Notes: generated by a model from the letters alone, not told the origin. A stretch of 64,000 bases of DNA from Macrostomum lignano (GCA_002269645.1 NIVC01003057.1:58456-122455), one strand, 5' to 3'; positions 3,533 through 64,000 are shown, counted from the stretch's first letter. Numbers and translations are program-made.

Positions 3533-3880
3533 CCATCAAAGTATCACCGATCCCATCAAAGTATCACCGATCCCATCAAAGTATCATCGATCCCATCAAA
3601 GTGTCATCGATCCCATCAAAGTATCACCGATCCCATCAAAGTATCACCGATCCCATCAAAGTATCACCGATCCCAACAAAGTATCACCGATCCCAACAAA
3701 GTATCACCAATCCCAACAAAGTATCACCGATCCCATCAAAGTATCACCGATCCCATCAAAGTATCACCGATCCCAACAAAGTATCACCGATCCCATCAAA
3801 GTATCACCGATCCCATCAAAGTATCACTGATCCCAACAAAGTATCACCGATCCCATCAAAGTATCACCGATCCCATCAAG
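3533..3880. repeat. Intronic minisatellite, 20-bp unit GTATCACCGATCCCATCAAA
   Basis: About 17 tandem copies in dynein intron 3478-3940. The same unit occurs at 15228-16035. Confidence 0.95.
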
Positions 3881-5850: not shown

Positions 5851-6540
5851 ACAAGATTCAATTATTGAAAATCGAGATTACAATAGTTAATAATTGTGTT
5901 TCTAAAAAATACTAAATTCGCATAAACAAAAATAAAAAAAAATGATATGTAAATTTAAACGTGGATTCTGGGAAAGCGGAGTTATTTTTGTGTTTTAAAT
6001 AACCATTTAGCCAAGACTTGTTTTTGTTTTTTTCATCTATGCAGAAAAAGAATTCAACTTAAATCTTAATTTGTGTTTTTTTCAGATTTCTAATCTCAAA
6101 TCACCGTTTTAAAGTTTTTTCTAATCCGAAAATGATTAAAGAGTTGCCATAAAAATAGAAATAGAATCTTTGTATTCAACTTGGATATACTCACTCTTCA
6201 GTGAAAAAATAGAATATTTTTCGAACCCGTTAATTAACTCCACCTTGTAGGTCTTTGATAGACTGGCTATATTAGTCTTAATATAGCGATAAACATAGAA
6301 TTGCTGAGGTCATTGCTGGCTTGTGATTATATTCTCTTTGATAATTATTTCCTCATACGCTCGAATTTCGTAATTCAGGGAGGCGACTTCCTCGTCACTG
6401 TCTGATTTTCTTAGAACTTGCGACTCCGTTCAGGAGGAAGCTTTACTTCCTTTGAGCAGAAGTGGAGAGAGGGATGGCTGAGGGATGAATTTTTCTAAGG
6501 TTTGCTTGCAGCTTGAAGCTCAAATCCAATGAACTACATG

Positions 6541-9449: not shown

Positions 9450-10270
9450 GGAACAGAGTGAGAGGAAGAGGGGAACAGAGGGAGAGAGGGAGAGAGGGGG
9501 AGGGGAAGAGGGAGGGAGGGAGAGAGGGGGAGAGGGGAGAGGGAGAGAGGGAGAGAGGGAGAGAGGGAGGAGGGAGAGAGGGAGAGAGGGGGAGAGGGGA
9601 GAGGGGGAGAGGGAGTGAGGGAGAGAGGGAGAGAGGGGGAGAGGGGGAGAGGGGGAGAAAGAGTGAGGGAGAGAGGGAGAGAGGGAGGGAGGGAGAGAGG
9701 GGGAGAGGGGGAGAGGAGGAGAGGGGGAGAGGGAGTGAGGGAGAGAGGAGAGAGGGGGAGAGGGAGAGAGGGGGAGAGGGGGAGAGGGAGAGAGGGGGAG
9801 AGAGAGAGAGGGGGAGAGGAGGAGAGGGAGAGAGGGGGAGGGGAAGAGGGAGAGAGGGAAAGAGGGAGAGAGGGAGAGAGAGAGAGGGAGAGAGGGAGGA
9901 GGGAGAGAGGGGAGAGGGGGAGAGGGGGAGAGGGAGTGAGGGAGAGAGGGAGAGAGGGGGAGAGGGGGAGAGGGGGAGAAAGAGTGAGGAGAGAGGGGGA
10001 GAGGGGGAGAGGGAGAGAGGGAGAGAGGGAGAGAGGGGGAGAGGGAGAGAGGGAGGAGGGAGAGAGGGAGAGAGGGGGAGAGGGGAGAGGGGGAGAGGGA
10101 GAGAGGGAGAGAGGGGGAGAGGGGGAGAGGGGAGAAAGAGTGAGGGAGAGAGGGGGAGAGGGGGAGAGGGAGAGAGGGGGAGAGGGAGAGAGGGGGAGAG
10201 TGGGAGAGGGGGAGAGGGAGAGAGGGAGAGAGGGAGAGAGAGAGAGGGAGAGAGGGAGAGAGGGGGAGGG
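9450..10270. repeat. Polypurine (GA/G-rich) low-complexity tract
   Basis: About 800 bp of almost only G and A. The ERG/PLSL-type ORFs are artefacts of it. Confidence 0.95.
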
Positions 10271-15150: not shown

Positions 15151-15227
15151 GTAAGCCCGTCGCACACAGATCGGCAGGGTTGCGTCCAACCCTCGTGCAG
15201 AATTTCACGATTATTTCCCGAATTTCC

Positions 15228-16035
15228 CGATCCCATCAAAGTATCACCGATCCCATCAAAGAATCACCGATCCCATCAAAGTATCACCGATCCCATCAAA
15301 GAATCACCGATCCCATCAAATAATCACCGATCCCATGAAAGAATCACCGAACCCATCAAAGAATCCCCGATCCCATCCAAGTATTATTGATCCCATCAAA
15401 GAATCACCGATCCCATCCAAGTATTATCGAGCCCATCAAAGAATCCCCGATCCCATCCAAGTATTACCGATCCCATCAAATTATCACCGAACCCATCAAA
15501 GAATCACCGATCACATCCAAGTATCCCCGATCCCATCAAAGTATCACCGATCCCATCAAAGAATCACCGAACCCATCAAAGAATCCCCGATCCCATCCAA
15601 GTAATATCGATCCCATCAAAGAATCCCCGATCCCATCCAAGTATCCCCGATCCCATCAAAGTATCACCGATCCCATCAAATTATCACCGAACCCATCAAA
15701 GAATCACCGATCACATCCAAGTATCCCCGATCCCATCAAAGTATCACCGATCCCATCAAAGAATCACCGAACCCATCAAAGAATCCCCGATCCCATCCAA
15801 GTATTATCGATCCCATCAAAGAATCACCGATGCCATCCAAGTATTATCGAACCCATCAAAGAATCCCCGATCCCATCCAAGTATTACCGATCCCATCAAA
15901 GAATCACCGATCCCATCCAAGTATCATCGATCCCATCAAAGTATCACCGAACCCATCAAAGAATCCCCGATCCCATCAAAGTATTATCGATCCCATCAAA
16001 GTATCATCAACCCCATCAAGGTATCACGATTCCAT
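15228..16035. repeat. Intronic minisatellite, 20-bp unit (GT/GA)ATCACCGATCCCATCAAA family, about 40 copies
   Basis: Fills protocadherin intron 1. Same consensus as 3533-3880. Confidence 0.95.
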
Positions 16036-16141
16036 CAGTTCCTAAGCCACACGCCTGACAATGAGACACCACTTAGTGTCAACTGTACTCCAGAAGCTGA
16101 GCCAGCACTCGCAGACACAAATCTCTCAATAAACATCCCAG

Positions 16142-49886: not shown

Positions 49887-50324
49887 GTATGGAGAATACC
49901 AGGACATGGTGGAGCTGTGGGCACAGTATGTGAAAACTGGCGATCGCGTACTCAACATTGGCTGCGGCAATTCCAATCTGGGCGCTGAGTTGCACGACTA
50001 TCAAAACTGCGAAGTCCTGTGCATTGACACCAGCTCCACTGTGGTGCAACAGATGTCGCGAAAGCACAGTAAACGACCCAGACTATCCTATCGCGTGATG
50101 GACGCCGCCAATCTTGAAGGCCTCAATGATGGCAGCTTTGCCTGCGCTGTAGACAAAGGCACCCTTGATGCTTTGATGTCGGCCGCAGATTCCTCTATTC
50201 AAGCTGTTGTTGATGGCATGCTGGCCGAGGCGCATCGGGTACTGCGGGTTGGCGGCAGGCATCTCATTGTTAGCCTTTGTCAGAAACAAGTTGTTGATAA
50301 ACTAGTGCAGCACATCTCTCTGAG
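49887..50324 (+). CDS. METTL13: METTL13 exon 2 (N-terminal class I methyltransferase domain)
   Basis: Acceptor TTCTAG|. Reads YGEY...VLNIGCGNS...CIDTS...VMDA...DKGTLDAL...MLAEAHRVLRVGGRHLIVSL. Donor AG|GTTTGT at 50325. Confidence 0.93.
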
Positions 50325-50449
50325 GTTTGTGAATTTGTCTTATGTTCTTTTTGGAATAAAAATCCCCTTGGAAAGAAATCTTACTAATCATGTGAAAACC
50401 TGCCACTCATTCCTTAAAAATCTCATTTTTATCCCGTGCGAAATCTCAG

Positions 50450-51655
50450 ATTTATCCAGTGAGAAATCTCTCATTCATCTAGTGGGAACTCTCTCTCATC
50501 TATCCATTTGGAAATCTCCCATTTATAAATTTGGAAATCTCCCATTTATTCATTGGGAAAACTCCCATTCATCTATTAGGAAATAGCCCATTCATCCATT
50601 AGGAAATAGCCCATTCATCCAGTGAGAAATCTCTCATTCATCTAGTGGGAACTCTCTCTCATCTATCCATTTAAAAATCTCCCATTTATCAATTTGGAAA
50701 TCTCCCATTTATTCATTGGGAAAACTCCCATTCATCTATTAGGAAATAGCCCATTCATCCATTAGGAAATAGCCCATTCATCCAGTGAGAAATCTCTCAT
50801 TCATCTAGTGGGAACTCTCTCTCATCTATCCATTTGAAAATCTCCCATTTATCAATTTGGAAATCTCCCATTTATTCATTGGGAAAACTCCCATTCATCT
50901 ATTAGGAAATAGCCCATTCATCCATTAGGAAATAGCCCATTCATCCAGTGAGAAATCTCTCATTCATCTAGTGGGAACTCTCTCATCTATCCATTTGGAA
51001 ATCTCCCATTTATCAATTTGGAAATCTCCCATTTATTCATTGGGAAAACTCCCATTCATCTATTAGGAAATAGCCCATTCATCCATTAGGAAATAGCCCA
51101 TTCATCCGGTGAGAAATCTCCCATTTACCCAGGGAGAAGTCTTCCATTCATTCAGTGAGAAATCTCCCATTTATCCAGTGAGAAATCTCCCATTCATCTA
51201 GTGGGAACTCTCTCTCATTTATCAATTTGGAAATCTCCCATTTATTCATTGGGAAAACTGCCATTCATCTATTAGGAAATAGCCCATTCATCCAGTGAGA
51301 AATCTCCCATTTACCCAGGGAGAAGTCTCCCATTCATTCAGTGAGAAATCTCCCATTTATCCAGTGAGAAATCTCCCATTTATCTAGTGAGAAATCTCCC
51401 ATTTATCCAGTGAGAAATCTCCCATTTATCCAGTGAGAAATCTCCCATTTATCCAGTGAGAAATCTCCCATTTATCCAGTGAGAAATCTCCCATTTATCC
51501 AGTGAGAAATCTCCCATTTATCCAGTGAGAAATCTCCCATTTATCCAGTGAGAAATCTCCCATTTATCCAGTGAGAAATCTCCCATTTATCCAGTGAGAA
51601 ATCTCCCATTTATCCAGTGAGAAATCTCCCATTTATCCAGTGAGAAATCTCCTAT
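50450..51655. repeat. 23-bp minisatellite GAGAAATCTCCCATTTATCCAGT with a 163-bp higher-order repeat, in METTL13 intron 2
   Basis: The higher-order unit recurs at 50461, 50624, 50787 and 50950. Homogeneous monomers run from about 51360 to 51655. Confidence 0.93.
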
Positions 51656-51688
51656 TTCTATACTTATTATCTCCCATAAATTTTGCAG

Positions 51689-53156
51689 GCCGTGGATAGC
51701 CCGAGTCCACCAGGTCGCATCAACATCGGCCTCGGACTCTTCCGGCTTTCCTTTGCCGGTGTTTTTTATTGCCCTAACCAAACTGCGCCCAGAAGCAGCA
51801 GCAACGGCAACTGCGGTCTCTTCCATAGTGCAGGTGCAGGACGCCTATTCCACTGGACCGCCTGAACGACTCGATTCAGTGGCCAGCCTCACTGATTGGA
51901 TTCGGCAAGTTCAACTAACAGCTTATTCCTTGTCTCGATCTTCCGGTATGGAAATCAACAGCACTGATGCCTCTGGCGATGCCGACAGTCAATGCCGGGT
52001 GACTCAGTTCAGTTATTCTTGCGGTCGCACCGGTTTGCCAACTTTCACCTGTCACTTGTTGACGCATGTCGCTACATCGTCTCGTCGACGTACTGGCTAC
52101 GCTGTCTTTATTGAACCGTTAGGATCGTCTGCCTGTCGATTGTCGCCTAGCGATCGGCGAGATCTGCTAGAATCGCAGTCTAATTTGCGTCGATTATTAT
52201 TTGTTAAATTGCATCCCTGGCTGCACTACCAGTCGGACACAGCGTTGCAAGCTTCGCTGTCTCGCCTAGTGATGGCATTTGCGCCTAAGCCTGGCATGCC
52301 AGAGTCTCAGGTGCCTTTCTTAAGCACTGGCCGGCTAGCTTATCCCTATCAGTCAGTTGCTACTCGAATTGGGTATATTGTTGAACAATCCGAGGATGAT
52401 AGTCAAACTAAAGAGCTCCGATTGCTACGCCCGGAAAGCGACCTGTCGCCGCTGCTTTGCTGCGCCAATGCCGCTCTGGTCAAGTCAGTGTCATCGACCG
52501 TCTGTTCCGACATTGTTGCTGAAGCTGGCAACAGTCCGTTGGGTCGCCTGCTAGATCAGCTTATTGGTATTAGTAGCGACACCAACCCGTGTGCTTTGAT
52601 CAATTGGCCTTGCAATCTTGACTGGCTGTTGACGTACAAGCATCGTCAACCTGAGAGGCCGCCTCCGAAGCTGTACGTGTCTGCATCGTCTCCGGCTGTT
52701 AGCCTTCTTGCCGAGTATTTTAACCTCACCTGGACTGCTACTAAGCAGCCGTTTGCATTGGATTCTCGGCACCGTCTAGTGGCTCTGTTTCCTCCTGCTG
52801 ACTCTCTGGCATCATATGCTGCAGCTGTGACACCCGAATCTATTGCTAGCCTAGCCAGTGCTATAGAATCGGACGGCTGCTTGCTGCTGGCTACTAGACT
52901 ATTCGATTCTAAGCAACAAGTTTCGAATATTAATGCCAGAGCTGTAGATTCCCTGCGTCAGTGTAGTCAATTTGTTGACGTCATTTGCGCTACCTTTTCT
53001 GATGAGGATATCGACGCTAAACAGGTAGAAATTGACGAGTCCGCTGAGCATCGCTGTCGTTGGTGGATTGCCTGCGCTCTGATGTCGATTGGATCGAAGT
53101 CTTTGATTGAAGACTTTCTTGCTGGTTTGCCTGGCTGTCAACTGATTGAAGCTTGA
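51689..53156 (+). CDS. METTL13: METTL13 exon 3 (linker and degenerate C-terminal methyltransferase domain)
   Basis: Acceptor TTTTGCAG|, and the phase-2 join gives RPWIARVHQV...PLPVFFIALTKLRP, ...YAVFIEP...LLESQSNLRRLLFVKLH. Total 2004 nt, or 668 codons. AATAAA at 53237-53242. Confidence 0.88.
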
Positions 53157-53383
53157 GCTGACTATGATGAGTTACGGCAAAAAGTAGATTTTGTGTTTTT
53201 AGAGAACATTTAAGGTCATTTTGAAGTCAGTTGTAAAATAAAATCATGAAAATTTGATACTCTATGTCAGAAGCATTTGTCATTATTGACCAACAGTTCT
53301 GCCAATTCTTTTAACAACACGTCGCTTTTTGTGTCTTTTTTTCAATTTTTAGCTTCTAGGTTAAAAGTTTGTGTTATTAGGTT

Positions 53384-53467
53384 AGGCAAAAATGATGATA
53401 TTACTGGTCCGTGTTTCTGAGCCACCCGTATTGCGGTGCTGCTGATAACTACCAGATCTGAATGCCT
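53384..53467 (+). ncRNA. SNORD18: Box C/D snoRNA U18/SNORD18-like, paralogue 1
   Basis: Box C ATGATGA at 53392-53398, guide TGGTCCGTGTTT, box D' CTGA at 53417-53420, C'-like TGCTGA, box D CTGA at 53458-53461. Terminal stem AGGCA/TGCCT. Confidence 0.9.
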
Positions 53468-53510: not shown

Positions 53511-53597
53511 ACAGCAATGATGAGATTTCTGGTCCGTGTTTCTGATTACCAATTTTAAACGGTAATGCTGTTACTTTTTACCAGAACTGAATGCTGT
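53511..53597 (+). ncRNA. SNORD18: Box C/D snoRNA U18/SNORD18-like, paralogue 2
   Basis: Box C at 53517-53523, same guide, D' at 53542-53545, D at 53587-53590. Terminal stem ACAGCA/TGCTGT. Confidence 0.9.
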
Positions 53598-53630
53598 TTA
53601 AATTAGTCTCAAAACCTGAAATAATTAACA

Positions 53631-56600
53631 ATGATGAGATTTCTGGTCCGTGTTTCTGATTACCCATTCAAGCGGTAATGCTGTTACTTTTTACCAGAAC
53701 TGAATGCCAATTTATCCAAGTTTATAATAGTAGAAGTTTAAATTAAAGGTAGGTAAATCAGGAGTTAGATGTTGATAACAATCAATGATGAGATTTCTGG
53801 TCCGTGTTTCTGATTACCCATTCAAGCGGTAATGCTGTTACTTTTTACCAGAACTGAATGCCAATTTATCCAAGTTTATAATAGTAGAAGTTTAAATTAA
53901 AGGTAGGTAAATCAGGAGTTAGATGTTGATAACAATCAATGATGAGATTTCTGGTCCGTGTTTCTGATTACCCATTCAAGCGGTAATGCTGTTACTTTTT
54001 ACCAGAACTGAATGCCAATTTATCCAAGTTTATAATAGTAGAAGTTTAAATTAAAGGTAGGTAAATCAGGAGTTAGATGTTGATAACAATCAATGATGAG
54101 ATTTCTGGTCCGTGTTTCTGATTACCCATTCAAGCGGTAATGCTGTTACTTTTTACCAGAACTGAATGCCAATTTATCCAAGTTTATAATAGTAGAAGTT
54201 TAAATTAAAGGTAGGTAAATCAGGAGTTAGATGTTGATAACAATCAATGATGAGATTTCTGGTCCGTGTTTCTGATTACCCATTCAAGCGGTAATGCTGT
54301 TACTTTTTACCAGAACTGAATGCCAATTTATCCAAGTTTATAATAGTAGAAGTTTAAATTAAAGGTAGGTAAATCAGGAGTTAGATGTTGATAACAATCA
54401 ATGATGAGATTTCTGGTCCGTGTTTCTGATTACCCATTCAAGCGGTAATGCTGTTACTTTTTACCAGAACTGAATGCCAATTTATCCAAGTTTATAATAG
54501 TAGAAGTTTAAATTAAAGGTAGGTAAATCAGGAGTTAGATGTTGATAACAATCAATGATGAGATTTCTGGTCCGTGTTTCTGATTACCCATTCAAGCGGT
54601 AATGCTGTTACTTTTTACCAGAACTGAATGCCAATTTATCCAAGTTTATAATAGTAGAAGTTTAAATTAAAGGTAGGTAAATCAGGAGTTAGATGTTGAT
54701 AACAATCAATGATGAGATTTCTGGTCCGTGTTTCTGATTACCCATTCAAGCGGTAATGCTGTTACTTTTTACCAGAACTGAATGCCAATTTATCCAAGTT
54801 TATAATAGTAGAAGTTTAAATTAAAGGTAGGTAAATCAGGAGTTAGATGTTGATAACAATCAATGATGAGATTTCTGGTCCGTGTTTCTGATTACCCATT
54901 CAAGCGGTAATGCTGTTACTTTTTACCAGAACTGAATGCCAATTTATCCAAGTTTATAATAGTAGAAGTTTAAATTAAAGGTAGGTAAATCAGGAGTTAG
55001 ATGTTGATAACAATCAATGATGAGATTTCTGGTCCGTGTTTCTGATTACCCATTCAAGCGGTAATGCTGTTACTTTTTACCAGAACTGAATGCCAATTTA
55101 TCCAAGTTTATAATAGTAGAAGTTTAAATTAAAGGTAGGTAAATCAGGAGTTAGATGTTGATAACAATCAATGATGAGATTTCTGGTCCGTGTTTCTGAT
55201 TACCCATTCAAGCGGTAATGCTGTTACTTTTTACCAGAACTGAATGCCAATTTATCCAAGTTTATAATAGTAGAAGTTTAAATTAAAGGTAGGTAAATCA
55301 GGAGTTAGATGTTGATAACAATCAATGATGAGATTTCTGGTCCGTGTTTCTGATTACCCATTCAAGCGGTAATGCTGTTACTTTTTACCAGAACTGAATG
55401 CCAATTTATCCAAGTTTATAATAGTAGAAGTTTAAATTAAAGGTAGGTAAATCAGGAGTTAGATGTTGATAACAATCAATGATGAGATTTCTGGTCCGTG
55501 TTTCTGATTACCCATTCAAGCGGTAATGCTGTTACTTTTTACCAGAACTGAATGCCAATTTATCCAAGTTTATAATAGTAGAAGTTTAAATTAAAGGTAG
55601 GTAAATCAGGAGTTAGATGTTGATAACAATCAATGATGAGATTTCTGGTCCGTGTTTCTGATTACCCATTCAAGCGGTAATGCTGTTACTTTTTACCAGA
55701 ACTGAATGCCAATTTATCCAAGTTTATAATAGTAGAAGTTTAAATTAAAGGTAGGTAAATCAGGAGTTAGATGTTGATAACAATCAATGATGAGATTTCT
55801 GGTCCGTGTTTCTGATTACCCATTCAAGCGGTAATGCTGTTACTTTTTACCAGAACTGAATGCCAATTTATCCAAGTTTATAATAGTAGAAGTTTAAATT
55901 AAAGGTAGGTAAATCAGGAGTTAGATGTTGATAACAATCAATGATGAGATTTCTGGTCCGTGTTTCTGATTACCCATTCAAGCGGTAATGCTGTTACTTT
56001 TTACCAGAACTGAATGCCAATTTATCCAAGTTTATAATAGTAGAAGTTTAAATTAAAGGTAGGTAAATCAGGAGTTAGATGTTGATAACAATCAATGATG
56101 AGATTTCTGGTCCGTGTTTCTGATTACCCATTCAAGCGGTAATGCTGTTACTTTTTACCAGAACTGAATGCCAATTTATCCAAGTTTATAATAGTAGAAG
56201 TTTAAATTAAAGGTAGGTAAATCAGGAGTTAGATGTTGATAACAATCAATGATGAGATTTCTGGTCCGTGTTTCTGATTACCCATTCAAGCGGTAATGCT
56301 GTTACTTTTTACCAGAACTGAATGCCAATTTATCCAAGTTTATAATAGTAGAAGTTTAAATTAAAGGTAGGTAAATCAGGAGTTAGATGTTGATAACAAT
56401 CAATGATGAGATTTCTGGTCCGTGTTTCTGATTACCCATTCAAGCGGTAATGCTGTTACTTTTTACCAGAACTGAATGCCAATTTATCCAAGTTTATAAT
56501 AGTAGAAGTTTAAATTAAAGGTAGGTAAATCAGGAGTTAGATGTTGATAACAATCAATGATGAGATTTCTGGTCCGTGTTTCTGATTACCCATTCAAGCG

Positions 56601-59600
56601 GTAATGCTGTTACTTTTTACCAGAACTGAATGCCAATTTATCCAAGTTTATAATAGTAGAAGTTTAAATTAAAGGTAGGTAAATCAGGAGTTAGATGTTG
56701 ATAACAATCAATGATGAGATTTCTGGTCCGTGTTTCTGATTACCCATTCAAGCGGTAATGCTGTTACTTTTTACCAGAACTGAATGCCAATTTATCCAAG
56801 TTTATAATAGTAGAAGTTTAAATTAAAGGTAGGTAAATCAGGAGTTAGATGTTGATAACAATCAATGATGAGATTTCTGGTCCGTGTTTCTGATTACCCA
56901 TTCAAGCGGTAATGCTGTTACTTTTTACCAGAACTGAATGCCAATTTATCCAAGTTTATAATAGTAGAAGTTTAAATTAAAGGTAGGTAAATCAGGAGTT
57001 AGATGTTGATAACAATCAATGATGAGATTTCTGGTCCGTGTTTCTGATTACCCATTCAAGCGGTAATGCTGTTACTTTTTACCAGAACTGAATGCCAATT
57101 TATCCAAGTTTATAATAGTAGAAGTTTAAATTAAAGGTAGGTAAATCAGGAGTTAGATGTTGATAACAATCAATGATGAGATTTCTGGTCCGTGTTTCTG
57201 ATTACCCATTCAAGCGGTAATGCTGTTACTTTTTACCAGAACTGAATGCCAATTTATCCAAGTTTATAATAGTAGAAGTTTAAATTAAAGGTAGGTAAAT
57301 CAGGAGTTAGATGTTGATAACAATCAATGATGAGATTTCTGGTCCGTGTTTCTGATTACCCATTCAAGCGGTAATGCTGTTACTTTTTACCAGAACTGAA
57401 TGCCAATTTATCCAAGTTTATAATAGTAGAAGTTTAAATTAAAGGTAGGTAAATCAGGAGTTAGATGTTGATAACAATCAATGATGAGATTTCTGGTCCG
57501 TGTTTCTGATTACCCATTCAAGCGGTAATGCTGTTACTTTTTACCAGAACTGAATGCCAATTTATCCAAGTTTATAATAGTAGAAGTTTAAATTAAAGGT
57601 AGGTAAATCAGGAGTTAGATGTTGATAACAATCAATGATGAGATTTCTGGTCCGTGTTTCTGATTACCCATTCAAGCGGTAATGCTGTTACTTTTTACCA
57701 GAACTGAATGCCAATTTATCCAAGTTTATAATAGTAGAAGTTTAAATTAAAGGTAGGTAAATCAGGAGTTAGATGTTGATAACAATCAATGATGAGATTT
57801 CTGGTCCGTGTTTCTGATTACCCATTCAAGCGGTAATGCTGTTACTTTTTACCAGAACTGAATGCCAATTTATCCAAGTTTATAATAGTAGAAGTTTAAA
57901 TTAAAGGTAGGTAAATCAGGAGTTAGATGTTGATAACAATCAATGATGAGATTTCTGGTCCGTGTTTCTGATTACCCATTCAAGCGGTAATGCTGTTACT
58001 TTTTACCAGAACTGAATGCCAATTTATCCAAGTTTATAATAGTAGAAGTTTAAATTAAAGGTAGGTAAATCAGGAGTTAGATGTTGATAACAATCAATGA
58101 TGAGATTTCTGGTCCGTGTTTCTGATTACCCATTCAAGCGGTAATGCTGTTACTTTTTACCAGAACTGAATGCCAATTTATCCAAGTTTATAATAGTAGA
58201 AGTTTAAATTAAAGGTAGGTAAATCAGGAGTTAGATGTTGATAACAATCAATGATGAGATTTCTGGTCCGTGTTTCTGATTACCCATTCAAGCGGTAATG
58301 CTGTTACTTTTTACCAGAACTGAATGCCAATTTATCCAAGTTTATAATAGTAGAAGTTTAAATTAAAGGTAGGTAAATCAGGAGTTAGATGTTGATAACA
58401 ATCAATGATGAGATTTCTGGTCCGTGTTTCTGATTACCCATTCAAGCGGTAATGCTGTTACTTTTTACCAGAACTGAATGCCAATTTATCCAAGTTTATA
58501 ATAGTAGAAGTTTAAATTAAAGGTAGGTAAATCAGGAGTTAGATGTTGATAACAATCAATGATGAGATTTCTGGTCCGTGTTTCTGATTACCCATTCAAG
58601 CGGTAATGCTGTTACTTTTTACCAGAACTGAATGCCAATTTATCCAAGTTTATAATAGTAGAAGTTTAAATTAAAGGTAGGTAAATCAGGAGTTAGATGT
58701 TGATAACAATCAATGATGAGATTTCTGGTCCGTGTTTCTGATTACCCATTCAAGCGGTAATGCTGTTACTTTTTACCAGAACTGAATGCCAATTTATCCA
58801 AGTTTATAATAGTAGAAGTTTAAATTAAAGGTAGGTAAATCAGGAGTTAGATGTTGATAACAATCAATGATGAGATTTCTGGTCCGTGTTTCTGATTACC
58901 CATTCAAGCGGTAATGCTGTTACTTTTTACCAGAACTGAATGCCAATTTATCCAAGTTTATAATAGTAGAAGTTTAAATTAAAGGTAGGTAAATCAGGAG
59001 TTAGATGTTGATAACAATCAATGATGAGATTTCTGGTCCGTGTTTCTGATTACCCATTCAAGCGGTAATGCTGTTACTTTTTACCAGAACTGAATGCCAA
59101 TTTATCCAAGTTTATAATAGTAGAAGTTTAAATTAAAGGTAGGTAAATCAGGAGTTAGATGTTGATAACAATCAATGATGAGATTTCTGGTCCGTGTTTC
59201 TGATTACCCATTCAAGCGGTAATGCTGTTACTTTTTACCAGAACTGAATGCCAATTTATCCAAGTTTATAATAGTAGAAGTTTAAATTAAAGGTAGGTAA
59301 ATCAGGAGTTAGATGTTGATAACAATCAATGATGAGATTTCTGGTCCGTGTTTCTGATTACCCATTCAAGCGGTAATGCTGTTACTTTTTACCAGAACTG
59401 AATGCCAATTTATCCAAGTTTATAATAGTAGAAGTTTAAATTAAAGGTAGGTAAATCAGGAGTTAGATGTTGATAACAATCAATGATGAGATTTCTGGTC
59501 CGTGTTTCTGATTACCCATTCAAGCGGTAATGCTGTTACTTTTTACCAGAACTGAATGCCAATTTATCCAAGTTTATAATAGTAGAAGTTTAAATTAAAG

Positions 59601-61249
59601 GTAGGTAAATCAGGAGTTAGATGTTGATAACAATCAATGATGAGATTTCTGGTCCGTGTTTCTGATTACCCATTCAAGCGGTAATGCTGTTACTTTTTAC
59701 CAGAACTGAATGCCAATTTATCCAAGTTTATAATAGTAGAAGTTTAAATTAAAGGTAGGTAAATCAGGAGTTAGATGTTGATAACAATCAATGATGAGAT
59801 TTCTGGTCCGTGTTTCTGATTACCCATTCAAGCGGTAATGCTGTTACTTTTTACCAGAACTGAATGCCAATTTATCCAAGTTTATAATAGTAGAAGTTTA
59901 AATTAAAGGTAGGTAAATCAGGAGTTAGATGTTGATAACAATCAATGATGAGATTTCTGGTCCGTGTTTCTGATTACCCATTCAAGCGGTAATGCTGTTA
60001 CTTTTTACCAGAACTGAATGCCAATTTATCCAAGTTTATAATAGTAGAAGTTTAAATTAAAGGTAGGTAAATCAGGAGTTAGATGTTGATAACAATCAAT
60101 GATGAGATTTCTGGTCCGTGTTTCTGATTACCCATTCAAGCGGTAATGCTGTTACTTTTTACCAGAACTGAATGCCAATTTATCCAAGTTTATAATAGTA
60201 GAAGTTTAAATTAAAGGTAGGTAAATCAGGAGTTAGATGTTGATAACAATCAATGATGAGATTTCTGGTCCGTGTTTCTGATTACCCATTCAAGCGGTAA
60301 TGCTGTTACTTTTTACCAGAACTGAATGCCAATTTATCCAAGTTTATAATAGTAGAAGTTTAAATTAAAGGTAGGTAAATCAGGAGTTAGATGTTGATAA
60401 CAATCAATGATGAGATTTCTGGTCCGTGTTTCTGATTACCCATTCAAGCGGTAATGCTGTTACTTTTTACCAGAACTGAATGCCAATTTATCCAAGTTTA
60501 TAATAGTAGAAGTTTAAATTAAAGGTAGGTAAATCAGGAGTTAGATGTTGATAACAATCAATGATGAGATTTCTGGTCCGTGTTTCTGATTACCCATTCA
60601 AGCGGTAATGCTGTTACTTTTTACCAGAACTGAATGCCAATTTATCCAAGTTTATAATAGTAGAAGTTTAAATTAAAGGTAGGTAAATCAGGAGTTAGAT
60701 GTTGATAACAATCAATGATGAGATTTCTGGTCCGTGTTTCTGATTACCCATTCAAGCGGTAATGCTGTTACTTTTTACCAGAACTGAATGCCAATTTATC
60801 CAAGTTTATAATAGTAGAAGTTTAAATTAAAGGTAGGTAAATCAGGAGTTAGATGTTGATAACAATCAATGATGAGATTTCTGGTCCGTGTTTCTGATTA
60901 CCCATTCAAGCGGTAATGCTGTTACTTTTTACCAGAACTGAATGCCAATTTATCCAAGTTTATAATAGTAGAAGTTTAAATTAAAGGTAGGTAAATCAGG
61001 AGTTAGATGTTGATAACAATCAATGATGAGATTTCTGGTCCGTGTTTCTGATTACCCATTCAAGCGGTAATGCTGTTACTTTTTACCAGAACTGAATGCC
61101 AATTTATCCAAGTTTATAATAGTAGAAGTTTAAATTAAAGGTAGGTAAATCAGGAGTTAGATGTTGATAACAATCAATGATGAGATTTCTGGTCCGTGTT
61201 TCTGATTACCCATTCAAGCGGTAATGCTGTTACTTTTTACCAGAACTGA
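53631..61249 (+). ncRNA. SNORD18: Tandem array of 50 apparently identical U18/SNORD18-like box C/D snoRNA genes (154-bp unit)
   Basis: Each unit reads ATGATGA-gatttc-TGGTCCGTGTTT-CTGA-ttacc(cattcaagc)ggtaa-tgctgt...accagaa-CTGA plus an 81-nt spacer. The first C box is at 53631 and the last at 61177, and 7546 = 49 x 154 exactly. The guide is the reverse complement of LSU rRNA GAAACACGGACCA. Confidence 0.9.
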
Positions 61250-61250
61250 A
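53631..61250. repeat. 154-bp tandem repeat, 49.5 units (DNA-level description of the snoRNA array)
   Basis: The period was measured at 53631, 53785 and 53939. Lines 53641 and 58261, which are 4620 bp or 30 units apart, are identical. Confidence 0.98.
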
Positions 61251-61342
61251 ATTACTTAGTCTATGAAAGTTGAGTTTATTGATTAATTAAGGCAGGTGTT
61301 TTTATACTGTTAATATCGTTAATGCATGCTTAAGCTGACAAC

Positions 61343-61579
61343 ATGACCAACACCAAGGGTATTCGCCGCGGCACGCGGTACATGTTTGCCAGGGATTTCC
61401 GACGCCGCGGTGCCCTCCCCCTGTCCACCTACATGCGGGTGTTTAAACGCGGTGATATTGTCGATATTAAAGGCAACGGCAGCATACAGAAAGGTATGCC
61501 GTATAAAACCTATCACGGCAAAACTGGCCGCGTGTACAATGTCACACCACACGCTGTCGGTGTGATTGTTAATAAGCAG
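61343..61579 (+). CDS. RPL21: 60S ribosomal protein L21 (eL21), coding exon 1
   Basis: Reads [23 protein letters not shown]...[26 protein letters not shown]. Donor CAG|GTAAGT at 61580. Confidence 0.97.
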
Positions 61580-61671
61580 GTAAGTTCGCGTAAAATTTAT
61601 ACAGAATCCTGAATTTTAAAACTCCTGACCACTTGTAGTCACCCTGCAATGACTGTCAGTCCTGTCACTTA

Positions 61672-62015
61672 CCTGTCATTTGTGTGACTCACCTGTCATT
61701 TGAGTGACACCTGTTATCTTTGTGACTCACCTGTTATTTGAGTGACTCATCTGTAATTTGAGTGACTCACCTGTTATTTGAGTGACTCATCTGTCATTTG
61801 AGTGACTCACCTGTCATTTGAGTGACTCGCCTGTCATTTGAGTGACACCTGTCATCTGAGTGACTCATCTGTCATCTTAGTGACTCACCTGTAATTTGAG
61901 TGACACCTGTCATCTGAGTGACTCATCTGTCATCTGAGTGACTCACCTGTCATCTGAGTGACTCACCTGTTATTTAAGTGACTCACCTGTTTTTTGAGTT
62001 ACACCTGTCATCTGA
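61672..62015. repeat. 20-bp minisatellite GAGTGACTCACCTGTCATTT in the RPL21 intron
   Basis: About 17 degenerate copies, many containing TGACTCA. Confidence 0.92.
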
Positions 62016-62057
62016 ATGACACATAACGATCGCCTCACCACCCCACAAATTCACCAG

Positions 62058-62302
62058 GTGCGCAACCGCGTGATCCCCAAACGGATCAACGTCCGCATCG
62101 AGCACGTGAATCCAGCAAGTGCCGACTGGACTTTCTTCGCCGCGTCAAAGAGAACGACATCAAGCGACGCGAGGCCAAAGCCGCTGGCAAGAAAATCTCC
62201 CTGAAGCGTCGGCCGCAGGGTCCGAGGCGCGCCACCATTGTGAAGACTAAGAAGAACAAGCCCCAGCTGCTGGAGCCGCTGCCCTACGAGCTGATCGCTT
62301 AG
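62058..62302 (+). CDS. RPL21: RPL21 coding exon 2; one missing C at 62112-62113
   Basis: Acceptor CACCAG|. Reads VRNRVIPKRINVRIEHVN(P)SKCRLDFLRRVKEND...LKRRPQGPR...LLEPLPYELIA*. Restoring one base gives 160 aa, the normal eL21 length. AATAAA at 62390-62395. Confidence 0.93.
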
Positions 62303-62544
62303 GCATTAAAAGGGCCTGCGTAATTCTATACAATATTACATCTGGACTCGAGTAATGGGCAAATGAATTTTCAATTCCGAGAATTATGAAATAAAAAACA
62401 CCGGCCTGTGGTTGTGTTGTTGTTGTTGGACAACTAAAGCTCTATTGGATGAAAGATTTGCGTTGGTGTTGTGTTGCTTCTTTTTGATGATAATATAATT
62501 AGCTTTTTCTAATTTTCGGCTTGTTAGGCTTGCAATGTACAGCC

Positions 62545-62897
62545 TCCCAGATCCTCAGTTTCTGGTCAGCCTCCCAGATCCTCAGTTGTTGGGCCACCAG
62601 CCTCCCAGATCCTCAGTTTTTGGGCCACAACTCCCCCCCCAGATCCTCAGTTGTTGGGCCACCCCCCCCCCCAGATCCTCAGTTGTTGGGCCACCAGCCT
62701 CCCAGATCCCCTGTTGCTGGCCATCCAGCCTCCCAGATCCCCACTTGCTGGGCCAGCCTCCCAGATCCTCTGTTGCTGTGCCACCACTGCCTCCCAGCTC
62801 CTCAGTTTGCTGGGCCAGCCTCCCGGATCCTCAGTTGCTGGGGCCGGCCTCCCAGATCCTCAGTTGCTGGGCCAGCCTCCCAGATCCCCAGTTGCTA
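62545..62897. repeat. Degenerate copy of the 28-bp CCTCCCAGATCCTCAGTTGCTGGGCCAG minisatellite
   Basis: Same consensus and orientation as 6541-8679. Confidence 0.92.
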
Positions 62898-62970
62898 GGC
62901 ATTGTCACCCAGTACTCAGACTCAACTGCGTGTTACCATCACCATTTCTGCCAATTGGACAACCAACACA

Positions 62971-63710
62971 ATGGCAACCGCTGTGCTACCTCCGCCGCCC
63001 TCAATGCCGGATCCGAACTCCTCTGGCGGCAGCTTCAGTCCTCTAACTCTGTTCGAATGCACCATGACCAATGCCGGTATGCTGGTGGACAGTATGCCAG
63101 TTAGGACCTGGTCTCGGCCCTACGCATCATTGGCACTCTGCACACTCACGTTGTCAACATCATGGACCCTGGCGTGGCCAGCGTGTGCGACCTGGCCGAT
63201 CAGTTCAACTCTCACCGGATTAAATGCCCCGCTGCCGCTGCCGAGACCGCCGCCGCCTCAGCTGCCGCCGCCGGCGAGGCCGAGCAGTCGCCAACTGCCA
63301 ACTCCTCACTAGACGAAGGCGGCAACGCTAAGAAACGCTTGAAACTGGACGATAATTCTATGGCCTCATCGTTAAACGATCAGAATTCTACGGATAACAA
63401 TCAGACACTTAATAACACCGCTTCTGCTGCTGTCAATGTCAAGTCCGAATCTGTTGCCGAATCTGATGATGATTGTTGTATCCTTGACGACGGCGGCTTA
63501 GGCCTGATTGGTTCCGACTTTTACACCAGCATGCAGCAGCAGCAACATCAGCCTCGCAATCCGCAGATATCCTCAGCAGCTTCAGCATCTGCCGCTCCAC
63601 CCTATGGCGGTCCCGTGCAAGATTCGGCAGCTATGAAGCAGATTTTACGCAACACCTACAAAGCTATGCGAGCTGGCGGTCCGCACCTATACGATTTTAA
63701 TAGGCCGTGA
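62971..63710 (+). CDS. Hypothetical protein of about 246 aa, probably nuclear; apparent -1 frameshift at 63104-63105
   Basis: MATAVLPPPP...LFECTMTNAGMLVDSMPVR joins DLVSALRIIGTLHTHVVNIMDPG... if AGG-ACC is read as AGG-GAC, i.e. with one extra G. It is GC-rich like the other exons and carries AKKRLKL. No family was recognised. Confidence 0.5.
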
Positions 63711-64000
63711 GAGATTCATCTGTGTATTCTCTAATTTTCTACTGGGTTTGTTAAATATGACAGATTATACTACTGAATTGAGAGTAGCTTAATACTGCAT
63801 GTGCCTCACAATTTATTAGCTTGAGCTTAAAAATCAAGAAATTATACTACTTAATTGATAGTAGTTTAATGGCACATGTATGGACTTATTAATGCTTCTC
63901 AGTAATCATTACAGCGGTTTAAAATCTCAGAAGAGACTACACTACTTAACTGAAAGTAGTTTAATAGCACATGCACGGAGTTATTTATGCTTCTCGGGAA

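What the first reader, a model, noticed from the sequence alone, without database searches (positions are those of the whole stretch)
53631..61249. A 7.6-kb 'satellite' is a 50-copy tandem array of U18/SNORD18 box C/D snoRNA genes
Seen: every 154-bp unit contains box C (ATGATGA), a 12-nt element TGGTCCGTGTTT directly before a D' box (CTGA), a short D'-C' hairpin (TTACC/GGTAA), and a D box (CTGA) 73 nt after the start of C. Known: the guide is the exact reverse complement of the universally conserved LSU rRNA segment TTGAAACACGGACCAAG. The D'+5 rule places 2'-O-methylation on GAAAC[A]CGG, the site guided by U18 (yeast snR18, 25S Am649; human SNORD18, 28S Am1313). U18 normally exists in one or a few copies. 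Large tandem C/D arrays are best known for orphan imprinted mammalian families such as SNORD115/116, not for a canonical rRNA guide. Inference: this is a recent, massive dosage amplification of one rRNA-modification guide, invisible to ORF- and repeat-based annotation.
Basis: partly seen in the sequence, partly recalled or inferred. Interest (0 to 1): 0.92.

Follow-up and report, generated by a model that had tools for sequence, protein, structure and literature searches.

The report
Amplified U18 snoRNA array, flatworm
One copy of the flatworm Macrostomum lignano's genome carries about 50 identical tandem copies of a gene for U18, a small RNA that guides one chemical mark on ribosomal RNA; sister copies of the same locus carry only 4 or 9, so this is most likely a recent expansion in a genome whose tandem repeats are all unstable, not a proven dosage adaptation.

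Summary
Window 53629-61250 is a 154-bp tandem array: 49 byte-identical units plus a 50th complete snoRNA core. Two diverged copies lie just upstream, at 53392 and 53517.

Each unit has box C, the exact U18 guide followed by D', a D'-C' hairpin, box D, and a U18-typical internal helix. SNORD18 is the best Rfam match but falls below its gathering score (31-35 bits against 41).

The organism is Macrostomum lignano. The cluster lies between a METTL13-like gene and RPL21 on the same strand, most likely in the 5' outron of an SL-trans-spliced RPL21.

Homeologous loci, about 98% identical in the flanks, carry 9 and 4 U18 copies in a shorter 113-bp unit, so the 154-bp expansion is recent and locus-specific. 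Three other minisatellites within 12 kb also differ about 2- to 16-fold between the same loci, which favours neutral repeat instability over selected dosage.

The amplified units have lost the terminal stem that the older copies keep. Their C-to-D core is identical to the homeolog's, so it is not array-specific.

The exact copy number and the perfect identity are uncertain at the assembly level. Expression was not testable.

Verdict: real U18 genes, an unusual amplification, and moderate interest.

The parts
53392..53461 (+). U18 copy A. The C-to-D core is 70 nt: box C ATGATGA, guide TGGTCCGTGTTT followed by D' CTGA, hairpin CACC/GGTG, and D CTGA. The terminal stem is AGGCA/UGCCU.
   Evidence: SNORD18 scores 32.0 bits. 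Terminal stem energy is -6.2 kcal/mol. The copy is conserved in L003 and L004.
53517..53590 (+). U18 copy B. The core is 74 nt with a loop variant CCAATTTTAAAC, a 113-bp-type spacer, and the canonical terminal stem ACAGCA/UGCUGU next to boxes C and D.
   Evidence: SNORD18 scores 33.9 bits. Terminal stem energy is -7.6 kcal/mol.
53631..61249 (+). Tandem array of 49 identical 154-bp units plus a 50th complete core at 61177-61249. Each unit is a 73-nt U18 core followed by an 81-nt spacer.
   Evidence: TRF and unit-by-unit identity. The same array appears in L002 (50 cores) and L001 (at least 46).
53785..53857 (+). Representative array core. It runs box C, GATTTC, guide TGGTCCGTGTTT, D' CTGA, hairpin TTACC-CATTCAAGC-GGTAA, degenerate C' (TGCTGT), ACCAGAA and D CTGA. 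The internal helix UUCUGGU/ACCAGAA is present.
   Evidence: One search gives the sequence. One search gives the internal helix at -8.3 kcal/mol, with 0.5% of shuffles as good. One search gives the SNORD18 alignment.
53858..53938 (+). The 81-nt spacer specific to the 154-bp unit. It leaves only 2 bp (CA/UG) of terminal stem and a weak external stem GAUAA/UUAUC. It contains GTAGG and GTAAA but no consensus GTRAG donor.
   Evidence: No source for the extra sequence was found (blastn-short).
53325..53343 (+). Polypyrimidine, TOP-like element CTTTTTGTGTCTTTTTTTC, a candidate RPL21 transcription start upstream of the cluster. This is an inference.
   Evidence: Read. It is conserved in L003 and L004. 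No transcript data were available.
61323..61328 (+). Position of the splice acceptor, with the exon starting at 61329 (CTTAAGCTGACAAC ATG). The window and L002 read TGCATG here. L001 and L003 read TTCCAG and L004 reads TTTCAG, which fit the [T/C]TNCAG trans-splice acceptor motif.
   Evidence: The motif and the SL sequence come from PMC8629364.
61343..61579 (+). First coding exon of RPL21 (eL21), 79 codons, followed by a GTAAGT donor.
   Evidence: The corrected protein is 100% identical to M. lignano BOX15_Mlig028121g1.
62058..62302 (+). Last coding exon of RPL21. In the window it carries a 1-nt deletion at about 62111 (CC instead of CCC) that shifts the frame. The exon is intact in L001 and L002.
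49906..53156 (+). 3' part of the upstream METTL13-like methyltransferase gene on the same strand. Its stop codon ends at 53156 and an AATAAA lies at 53237-53242.
   Evidence: Pfam methyltransferase domains. A 676-aa gene model with Methyltransf_11/25/31 is called in L003 and L004. Sequence read.

Best explanation
What it is: a genuine cluster of U18-type box C/D snoRNA genes in Macrostomum lignano. It lies between a METTL13-like gene and RPL21, on their strand.

How each RNA works: each RNA should be about 75-85 nt. Its D' guide UGGUCCGUGUUU pairs with the universally conserved LSU rRNA segment AAAC[A]CGGACCA. This directs fibrillarin to 2'-O-methylate the A equivalent to yeast 25S A649.

How it is expressed (inferred): Pol II transcribes the cluster as part of the RPL21 primary transcript. 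An upstream TOP-like element may mark the start. The cluster is discarded as the 5' outron when the spliced leader is joined at CAG|CTTAAG, 14 nt before the AUG. Endo- and exonucleolytic trimming then releases the snoRNAs.

How the array arose: the ancestral state is a short tandem cluster, copy A plus 3-8 copies of a 113-bp unit with a proper terminal stem. In one homeolog a variant unit with a longer 81-nt spacer expanded to about 50 copies very recently. The likely mechanism is unequal exchange or replication slippage, the same instability that changes every other minisatellite at this locus.

Likely consequence: the expansion is most likely selectively neutral. The amplified copies keep the boxes, guide and internal helix but have lost the terminal stem, so they probably mature less efficiently than the older copies.

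Shown here: the sequence anatomy, the guide-target match, the copy-number contrast between loci, and the loss of the stem.
Inferred: transcription, processing, methylation and neutrality.
For: Identity:
- The guide plus D' matches the SNORD18 consensus exactly, and SNORD18 is the top Rfam family for copy A, copy B and the array unit in the window. It is the only family at E<0.01 for all nine copies in L003.
- The yeast target context comes from PMC3938493.
- Paralogs A and B differ in the hairpin and terminal stem but keep both paired. The hairpin is CACC/GGUG in A and UACC/GGUA in B. The terminal stem is AGGCA/UGCCU in A and ACAGCA/UGCUGU in B. Boxes and guide are invariant.
- The U18-typical internal helix upstream of box D is present, and its sequence covaries across eukaryotes.

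Organism and context:
- RPL21 is 100% identical to the M. lignano protein.
- The gene order METTL13-like, U18 cluster, RPL21 is found in four Mlig_3_7 contigs.

Recent expansion:
- L003 has 9 copies and L004 has 4, in 113/114-bp units. Their flanks are about 98% identical to the window.

Neutral instability, comparing the window with L003 and L004:
- 23-mer: 53 copies against 3.3 and 3.3
- 20-mer in the RPL21 intron: 18 against 53 and 13
- 28-mer: 12 against 19 and 10

Outron model:
- No GTRAG donor lies between the two genes.
- A YTNCAG acceptor is present in three of the four Mlig_3_7 contigs.
- The last 6 nt of the SL sit exactly at that junction in the window and L002.

Polymerase: a T5 run inside the core argues against Pol III.

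Loss of stem: +0.6 kcal/mol in the array unit, against -6.1 to -7.6 in copy A, copy B and the CAGCA-type units of L003.
Against: - No expression, snoRNP-association or methylation data could be consulted.
- SNORD18 does not reach Rfam's gathering score.
- The M. lignano 28S sequence itself was not checked. The target is assumed from universal conservation.
- RNAfold gives the unit no unusual stability (z = 0.12). This is normal for C/D snoRNAs but gives no support.
- The array's 100% identity contrasts with 82-93% in the neighbouring minisatellites. It is either much younger than they are or has been homogenised.
- The trans-splicing of RPL21 is inferred from motifs, not from reads.
- The window and L002 haplotype lacks the consensus acceptor.
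- Neutrality is argued only by analogy with the neighbouring repeats.
Confidence: 0.6

Rival explanations
1. Adaptive dosage amplification. Under this view selection favoured about 50 copies in order to raise U18 levels. That would secure or increase methylation of the target A, or some other U18 function, in a fast-proliferating, regenerating animal.
For: - The expanded unit is perfectly homogeneous and retains every functional core element.
- It sits beside a highly expressed ribosomal-protein gene.
- Tandem multiplication of U18 recurs at this locus (4, 9 and 52 copies).
[quoted passage not shown] U18 dosage can therefore matter.
Against: - Three neighbouring non-coding minisatellites vary about 2- to 16-fold between the same loci. 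Expansion therefore needs no selection.
- The amplified units lost the terminal stem.
- Homeologous loci manage with 4-9 copies.
- Other eukaryotes sampled have 1-3 copies.
- No data on expression or methylation stoichiometry were available.
Confidence: 0.12
2. Assembly artefact. Under this view the true locus has only a few units, as the homeologs do, and the assembler over-expanded a short repeat. Alternatively the copy number is roughly right but the perfect identity is produced by consensus calling.
For: - In Mlig_3_7 the array sits at a contig start (L002) or next to an N gap joined to non-collinear sequence (L001).
- The window and L002 are the same locus in different polishing states, so their shared count of 50 is not independent.
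- The window has 10 single-base deletions in 2.75 kb of unique flank. About 28 would be expected in the array at that rate, and none is seen.
Against: - Contiguous runs of 50 and at least 46 units are assembled in separate contigs, and a 154-bp unit is absent from the homeologs. The array is therefore not a mis-join of homeolog reads.
- L002 and the window both have distinguishable anchors on both sides: copies A and B upstream and RPL21 downstream.
- A 7.6-kb array could in principle be crossed by single long reads, if these assemblies were built from them. This rests on general knowledge and was not checked here.
Confidence: 0.1
3. A silent satellite of snoRNA pseudogenes. Under this view the 154-bp units are transcribed little or not at all, or fail to assemble into stable snoRNPs. 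Functional U18 would then come only from copies A and B and from the homeologous clusters.
For: - The array unit has no terminal stem (+0.6 kcal/mol) and only a weak AU-rich external stem (-2.6). All other U18s examined here have 4-6 bp next to the boxes.
- The window and L002 haplotype has also lost the consensus acceptor of the downstream RPL21.
- Fifty snoRNAs in one outron or intron would need endonucleolytic separation.
Against: - Boxes C, D' and D, the guide, the hairpin and the internal helix are all intact in all 50 copies.
- Half of the 113-bp units in L003 also have a weakened stem (CAACA, -0.5 kcal/mol).
- External stems are known to substitute for terminal stems in some intronic C/D snoRNAs. 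This rests on my own knowledge of Darzacq and Kiss 2000 and was not checked here.
Confidence: 0.3
4. A SNORD116-like host gene. Under this view each 154-bp unit is a mini-exon plus a short intron holding one snoRNA, so the array follows the rule of one snoRNA per intron.
For: - The spacer contains TTTATAATAG|TAGAAGTTTAAATTAAAG|GTAGGTAAAT, which looks like an acceptor followed by a donor. These signals are absent from the 113-bp unit.
Against: - The unit has no GT[G/A]AG donor and no YTNCAG or CAG acceptor in a suitable position, judged by M. lignano's own consensus.
- The implied exon would be only about 18 nt.
- The snoRNA would lie only about 25 nt from the acceptor.
- Such signals are expected by chance in an AT-rich spacer.
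Confidence: 0.05

Closest known systems
U18 / SNORD18 (Rfam RF00093; yeast snR18; human SNORD18A/B/C and chicken GGgCD33 in RPL4 introns)
   Same: - Box C/D architecture that uses the 5' (D') guide.
- A guide plus D' identical to the family consensus.
- The same predicted target A in the conserved GAAAC[A]CGGACC segment.
- An internal helix upstream of box D.
- Multi-copy and associated with a translation-related gene: RPL4 in vertebrates and EFB1 in yeast (PMC2653536, PMC3938493).
   Different: - The neighbouring gene is RPL21, not RPL4 or EFB1.
- The linkage is absent from the four other species checked.
- All copies lie together upstream of the first coding exon, not one per intron.
- There are 52 copies instead of 1-3.
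- The spacer between C and the guide is shorter and the 3' half is longer, so the Rfam score falls below the gathering score.
- The amplified copies lack the terminal stem.
Mammalian imprinted tandem C/D arrays (SNORD115/116, SNORD113/114)
   Same: Dozens of near-identical C/D snoRNA genes in a head-to-tail array within one transcription unit.
   Different: - Those are orphan or non-rRNA guides with units of kilobase scale. Each has its own exons, giving one snoRNA per intron, and the arrays are imprinted and conserved across mammals.
- Here the guide is a canonical rRNA guide and the unit is 154 bp with no convincing exons.
- The array is specific to one locus and absent from the homeolog.
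Polycistronic or tandem snoRNA clusters of plants, trypanosomatids and Euglena, and the Drosophila snoR28-like X-linked array (17 copies in 4.5 kb, PMC2721679)
   Same: - Several snoRNAs lie close together on one precursor with short spacers and must be separated by nucleases.
- Tandem duplication of the same snoRNA occurs.
- In trypanosomatids this co-occurs with SL trans-splicing.
- Plant-type clusters holding two U18 copies were seen here (L009, L024).
   Different: - Those clusters usually mix different snoRNAs or have few copies of each.
- A 50-fold homogeneous repeat of one canonical guide in an animal was not found in the literature I could search.
Ordinary M. lignano minisatellites
   Same: - Head-to-tail repeats with large copy-number differences between homeologous loci.
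- Three other arrays within 12 kb behave the same way.
   Different: - The period is longer (154 bp against 20-28 bp) and the identity is 100%, against 82-93%.
- The unit carries a complete functional-looking RNA gene.

Membership tests
Box C/D snoRNA (class) | Box C (RUGAUGA) near the 5' end and box D (CUGA) near the 3' end, with internal D' and C' boxes | tested here: met
   Every copy has AUGAUGA (GUGAUGA in copy A of L004), a D' CUGA and a D CUGA, with an 18-nt spacer between C and D'. The C' box is degenerate (UGCUGU).
Box C/D snoRNA (class) | A short 5'/3' terminal stem that brings boxes C and D together | tested here: inconclusive
   Met in copy A (-6.2 kcal/mol), copy B (-7.6) and the CAGCA-type units of L003 (-6.1). 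Not met in the 50 amplified units, which score +0.6 and have only a -2.6 external stem.
Box C/D snoRNA (class) | A stable RNA of about 70-100 nt bound by fibrillarin, NOP56, NOP58 and SNU13 | not testable with these tools
   No RNA-seq or RIP data are reachable. No paper in the library describes M. lignano snoRNAs.
SNORD18 / U18 (RF00093) | A guide directly upstream of D' that is complementary to LSU rRNA GAAAC[A]CGGACCA, with the fifth nucleotide rule selecting that A | tested here: met
   GGUCCGUGUUUCUGA aligns to the SNORD18 consensus with full posterior probability. The rRNA context at yeast A649 was reconstructed from the DNAzyme arms in PMC3938493. The M. lignano 28S itself was not examined.
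SNORD18 / U18 (RF00093) | A score at or above Rfam's gathering score of 41 bits | tested here: not met
   There are 0 hits at the gathering score in the window and in L003. The best scores are 34.7, 33.9 and 32.0 bits and 31.4-34.0 bits. cmscan uses a local end and misplaces the 3' end. As calibration, only 8 of 20 metagenome loci with the exact 16-mer pass, and 10 of the 15 passing hits score 41.7-47 bits.
SNORD18 / U18 (RF00093) | An internal helix between the region just upstream of box D and the 5' edge of the D' guide. This feature was observed here across U18s and is not part of the Rfam structure. | tested here: met
   The helix is UUCUGGU/ACCAGAA at -8.3 kcal/mol in copy B and the array unit, and -6.4 in copy A. 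Analogous helices with other sequences occur in L011, L024, L031, L055 and L066, where at most 2.5% of shuffles are as stable. L061 has one too, but there 14% of shuffles are as stable. The helix is weak in the two L009 copies.
SNORD18 / U18 (RF00093) | 2'-O-methylation of the target A depends on the snoRNA | not testable with these tools
   This needs RiboMeth-seq and a knock-down or deletion.
SNORD115/116-type host-gene array | Each repeat unit has its own exon(s), and the snoRNA lies in the intron between them | tested here: not met
   The 154-bp unit has no GT[G/A]AG donor and no suitably placed consensus acceptor (consensus from PMC8629364). Only near-consensus GTAGG and GTAAA are present.
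Outron- or intron-hosted snoRNA of a ribosomal-protein gene | The snoRNA lies on the host's strand, upstream of a used splice acceptor and inside the primary transcript | tested here: inconclusive
   The cluster is on the same strand and ends about 80 nt before the acceptor. A YTNCAG acceptor is present in L001, L003 and L004, and an SL-like TGCATG lies at the junction in the window and L002. A TOP-like element lies upstream and there is no cis donor. No transcript evidence exists.
Neutral minisatellite or satellite | Copy number varies freely between homologous loci, as it does for neighbouring non-genic repeats | tested here: met
   The U18 cluster has 49.5 copies against 7.7 and 2.7. The 23-mer has 53 against 3.3 and 3.3. 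The 20-mer has 18 against 53 and 13. The 28-mer has 12 against 19 and 10.

The most novel reading that the evidence does not exclude
The U18 cluster may be a case of snoRNAs encoded in the outron, or in the space between cistrons, of an SL-trans-spliced ribosomal-protein gene. The snoRNAs would be matured from RNA that trans-splicing discards.

Its copy number (4, 9 and about 52 at homeologous loci within one animal) would form a natural dosage series for a single conserved rRNA 2'-O-methylation guide. If the amplified copies are expressed, U18 level and methylation stoichiometry at the A649-equivalent site could differ with array length. Downstream translation properties could differ too, by analogy with yeast SNR18 overexpression.

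This would make the question of whether snoRNA dosage limits site-specific rRNA modification testable in a regenerating animal.
Probability: 0.15. Interest if true: 0.65.

Novelty: new variant of a known kind. Interest (0 to 1): 0.42.

Why it matters
If the amplified copies are expressed, this is an unusually clean natural experiment. One canonical, universally conserved rRNA-methylation guide is present at very different gene doses at otherwise about 98%-identical loci, in a transgenesis-capable regeneration model. It could show three things:
- whether guide abundance limits site-specific 2'-O-methylation;
- how many snoRNAs can be matured from a single outron or intron;
- whether a terminal stem is dispensable in vivo.

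If the copies are not expressed, the array documents how a functional small-RNA gene can seed a satellite. It is also a warning for annotation: masked tandem repeats can hide RNA genes, and repeat-adjusted intergenic distances in M. lignano operon calls subtract such arrays.

Tried and rejected
- Rfam at gathering score on the whole window and on L003: no hit. Permissive mode was needed.
- RNAfold of a unit with flanks: MFE -21 kcal/mol, z = 0.12, so not informative.
- Formal pair counting on alignment A2: abandoned. Copy A's terminal stem is shifted by 3 nt relative to copy B, and MAFFT columns cannot hold both registers. Duplex energies were used instead.
- Origin of the extra 41 nt of spacer: blastn-short against the rest of the window and against L003 and L004 found only 10-12-nt chance matches. 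The one exception is GTTTAAATTA, which is shared with the 113-bp spacer.
- Mini-exon (SNORD116-like) reading: rejected because consensus donors and acceptors are lacking.
- Coding potential: no ORF of 90 aa or more lies between 53157 and 62520 on either strand.
- Pol III transcription: unlikely because of the T5 run in the core.
- Ancestral U18-RPL21 linkage: no guide within 8 kb of RPL21 in Schistosoma mansoni, Paragonimus westermani (where only 565 bp upstream of the gene was available), Cichlidogyrus or Mercenaria.
- Literature: nothing on M. lignano snoRNAs, on U18 arrays or on the gene ids. PMC8629364 has no supplements held as text.
- L001 and L002 as independent haplotypes: rejected. 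They differ only by a 3-nt patch and by homopolymer indels.
- A purifying-selection argument from the identical core in the window and L003: rejected. At about 2% flank divergence only about 1.5 differences are expected in 73 nt.

Full report
**1. The observation**

Tandem Repeats Finder reports one array at 53629-61250 with period 154, 49.5 copies, 100% matches and no indels. I cut the sequence into 154-bp units starting at 53631. This gives 49 units that are identical at every base, plus a 50th unit that stops right after its D box at 61249.

The 16-mer TGGTCCGTGTTTCTGA, which is the guide plus D', occurs 52 times, always on the + strand. Fifty copies are in the array. Two lie just upstream: copy A (core 53392-53461) and copy B (core 53517-53590).

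Every unit contains, in order:
- box C ATGATGA
- GATTTC
- the guide TGGTCCGTGTTT
- D' CTGA
- the hairpin TTACC-CATTCAAGC-GGTAA
- a degenerate C' box
- ACCAGAA
- D CTGA

The C-to-D core is 73 nt, so box D starts at nt 70. Twelve nucleotides of the rRNA 17-mer are complementary to the guide, not seventeen.

**2. Is it U18?**

At Rfam's gathering scores the whole window gives no hit. In permissive mode SNORD18 (RF00093) is the best family for all three copy types, at 34.7, 33.9 and 32.0 bits against a threshold of 41. It is the only family at E<0.01 for all nine copies of a homeologous locus, at 31.4-34.0 bits.

The alignments show the 15 nt GGUCCGUGUUUCUGA matching the consensus with full posterior probability. 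The score is lost in three places: a shorter spacer between C and the guide, a longer 3' half, and a misplaced 3' end.

To judge what a near miss means, I scanned the metagenome collection for the exact 16-mer and ran Rfam on 20 of the hits. Only 8 of those 20 loci reach the gathering score, and many do so narrowly (41.7-47 bits). Failing the threshold is therefore weak evidence against membership.

Independent support for the target comes from PMC3938493. Its DNAzymes against yeast 25S A649, the snR18 site, have arms that define the rRNA as GCCCGUCUUGAAAC[A]CGGACCAAGGAGUC. The worm guide pairs with AAAC[A]CGGACCA, and the fifth position upstream of D' falls on that A.

Two further features speak for real genes:
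- **Paired elements covary between paralogs.** Copies A and B differ in the hairpin (CACC/GGUG against UACC/GGUA, with a UUGCC G-U variant in L003). They also differ in the terminal stem (AGGCA/UGCCU against ACAGCA/UGCUGU). Both stay paired, while the boxes and guide are invariant.
- **A U18-typical internal helix is present.** The bases just upstream of box D pair with the 5' edge of the guide region (UUCUGGU/ACCAGAA, -8.3 kcal/mol). The same helix, built from other sequences, occurs in most of the Rfam-confirmed U18s I examined from unrelated eukaryotes.

**3. Organism and surroundings**

The two exons downstream (61343-61579 and 62058-62302) encode ribosomal protein eL21. In the window the second exon changes frame inside a conserved motif. 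Restoring one C gives a protein 100% identical to Macrostomum lignano BOX15_Mlig028121g1.

The gene upstream (49906-53156, same strand) has class I methyltransferase domains.

The window is crowded with minisatellites: TRF returns 64 rows.

**4. Other copies of the locus**

Exact look-up of the RPL21 proteins returned four contigs of assembly GCA_002269645.1.

| Locus | U18 content | Relation to the window |
|---|---|---|
| L002 | copies A and B plus 50 array cores, the same layout | differs by 2 mismatches and 12 single-base indels in 10.6 kb |
| L001 | at least 46 identical 154-bp units, then an N gap | sequence upstream of the gap matches nothing in the window |
| L003 | 9 copies: A plus eight 113-bp units | homeolog, flanks about 98% identical |
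| L004 | 4 copies | homeolog, flanks about 98% identical |

L001 and L002 differ from each other only by a three-substitution patch and by homopolymer indels. They are near-identical copies, and the window is a less polished rendering of the same locus. It carries ten extra single-base deletions in 2.75 kb, including the RPL21 frameshift.

In L003 and L004 the gap between the METTL13-like stop codon and the RPL21 start codon is only 1.3 and 0.8 kb, against 8.2 kb in the window. The 73-nt core of the window's array unit is byte-identical to the major core in L003, so the loop variant CATTCAAGC is not array-specific. Only the spacers differ, at 40 nt against 81 nt.

The 154-bp array therefore arose after the two homeologs diverged by about 2%, from a locus that already held a short U18 tandem.

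**5. Selection or repeat instability?**

The same comparison supplies a control. Every tandem array in this 12-kb neighbourhood differs several-fold between the loci:

| Repeat | Window | L003 | L004 |
|---|---|---|---|
| 23-mer in the METTL13-like gene | 53 | 3.3 | 3.3 |
| U18 cluster | 49.5 | 7.7 | 2.7 |
| 20-mer in the RPL21 intron | 18 | 53 | 13 |
| 28-mer downstream | 12 | 19 | 10 |

Expansion of the U18 unit therefore needs no special explanation.

The amplified unit has also lost the terminal stem. Duplex energies next to the boxes are -6.2 kcal/mol (copy A), -7.6 (copy B), -6.1 (L003 CAGCA units), -0.5 (L003 CAACA units) and +0.6 (154-bp unit). The 154-bp unit has only a weak external stem at -2.6. 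Most of the other U18s examined keep 4-6 bp there.

These two facts make a neutral, recent expansion more likely than selected dosage. They also leave open whether the amplified copies mature efficiently.

**6. How the cluster is probably expressed**

PMC8629364 gives the M. lignano consensus signals:
- donor: GT[G/A]AG
- acceptor: CAG
- SL trans-splice acceptor: [T/C]TNCAG
- spliced leader sequence: ...CAATTTATTGCATG

No GTRAG lies between the METTL13-like stop codon and the RPL21 ATG in the window, and none lies inside the repeat unit. L001, L003 and L004 have TTCCAG or TTTCAG ending 14 nt before the ATG.

In the window and L002 that hexamer reads TGCATG, which is the last six bases of the spliced leader, exactly at the predicted junction. 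This could be an RNA-templated patch or a polishing artefact from SL-bearing reads. Either would point to SL trans-splicing at 61329. Chance is not excluded: three substitutions all going toward the SL sequence has a probability of about 1 in 27.

A polypyrimidine, TOP-like element at 53325-53343 is conserved upstream of copy A.

I therefore infer that the cluster lies in the RPL21 outron, or in the space between cistrons of a METTL13-RPL21 operon. The snoRNAs would be released from the discarded RNA. A T5 run inside the core argues against Pol III. All of this is inference, because no transcript data were reachable.

**7. Assembly caveats**

- In Mlig_3_7 the array sits at a contig start or beside a gap.
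- The count of 50 in the window and in L002 is not independent.
- At the window's own error rate about 28 single-base errors would be expected in 7.6 kb, and none is seen. Pooled consensus calling probably contributes to the perfect identity.

Dozens of copies is a robust statement. Exactly 50 identical copies is not.

**8. Comparison with what is known**

- **U18 elsewhere.** U18 is multi-copy in other species: three copies in RPL4 introns in chicken and human, and one in the EFB1 intron in yeast (PMC2653536, PMC3938493).
- **Small tandems.** Tandems of 2-3 copies occur in other eukaryotes (L066, L009, L061).
- **Linkage.** The link to RPL21 was not found in four other species.
- **An invertebrate array.** A 17-copy snoR28-like tandem array has been predicted on the Drosophila X chromosome (PMC2721679).
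- **Mammalian arrays.** The large mammalian arrays (SNORD115/116) are orphan guides with one snoRNA per intron, an architecture not supported here.

I found no report of a comparable array of a canonical rRNA guide in an animal, and none of M. lignano snoRNAs, in the searchable library.

**9. Verdict**

These are real U18-type genes, and the amplification is real, recent and locus-specific. It is most likely a neutral product of this genome's repeat instability, and whether the amplified copies are expressed is unknown. I class it as a new variant of a known kind, of moderate interest. Its main value is as a possible natural dosage series and as a case of snoRNAs sitting in an outron.

Noticed in passing
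window 61323-61328 (also L002 7945-7950): TGCATG replaces the consensus trans-splice acceptor TTCCAG/TTTCAG seen in L001, L003 and L004. It equals the last 6 nt of the M. lignano spliced leader, exactly at the predicted SL-exon junction. These three changes are the only substitutions between L001 and L002 in 2.75 kb. Possible causes are an RNA-templated conversion, polishing with SL-bearing RNA reads, or chance.
   Followed up: partly
window ~62111, and nine other sites in 61251-64000: A single-base deletion (CC instead of CCC) shifts the frame of the last RPL21 exon. The window has ten single-base deletions relative to both Mlig_3_7 contigs. It is therefore a less polished assembly, and RPL21 is not a pseudogene.
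   Followed up: yes
window 50428-51657, 61667-62020, 62540-62900; L003 7108-7189, 10319-11357, 11878-12437: Three non-genic minisatellites flanking the U18 array differ about 2- to 16-fold in copy number between homeologous loci: the 23-mer has 53 copies against 3.3, the 20-mer 18 against 53 and 13, and the 28-mer 12 against 19 and 10.
   Followed up: yes
window 6540-8679 and 62540-62900; 3533-3879 and 15227-16037: The same minisatellite families recur at separate places tens of kb apart, in or near different genes. One is the 28-mer GCCTCCCAGATCCTCAGTTGCTGGGCCA and the other the 20-mer CCATCAAAGTATCACCGATC. This suggests dispersal by a mobile element or by repeated seeding.
   Followed up: no
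Metagenome loci L011, L024, L031, L055, L061, L066; window U18 copies: U18 snoRNAs from unrelated eukaryotes share an internal helix between the 5-7 nt just upstream of box D and the 5' edge of the D' guide region. The sequences covary: AUCUUC/GAAGAU, CACUUC/GAAGUG, AUUGGU/ACCAAU and UUCUGGU/ACCAGAA. The helix is not part of the Rfam consensus structure shown by cmscan.
   Followed up: partly
L066 85-376; L009 6122-6904; L061 954-4145: Small natural U18 tandems or clusters occur in unidentified eukaryotes. L066, an AT-rich contig, has three copies 123 and 153 bp apart. L009 has a plant-type cluster with SNOR75, snoZ105 and two U18 copies. L061 has three SNORD18 and two SNORD16 copies, as in an RPL4-type host.
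   Followed up: partly
window 61329-61346: The spliced leader ends in AUG. If it is joined at 61329, AUG-CUU-AAG-CUG-ACA-ACA-UGA would form a six-codon upstream ORF whose stop codon overlaps the RPL21 start codon. This is inference only.
   Followed up: no
L004 9419 and 9938-10000: Copy A in L004 has GTGATGA as box C, which is still RUGAUGA. The contig has many homopolymer deletions, including several in the RPL21 coding sequence, so its fine sequence is unreliable.
   Followed up: partly
L001 1-1003: The sequence upstream of the N gap that abuts the array matches nothing in the window or in L002-L004. The scaffold join at the array is therefore not collinear with the window.
   Followed up: partly
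L005 12507-12584 (-): A mir-3492 precursor hit (81 bits) lies about 4 kb downstream of Schistosoma mansoni RPL21.
   Followed up: no
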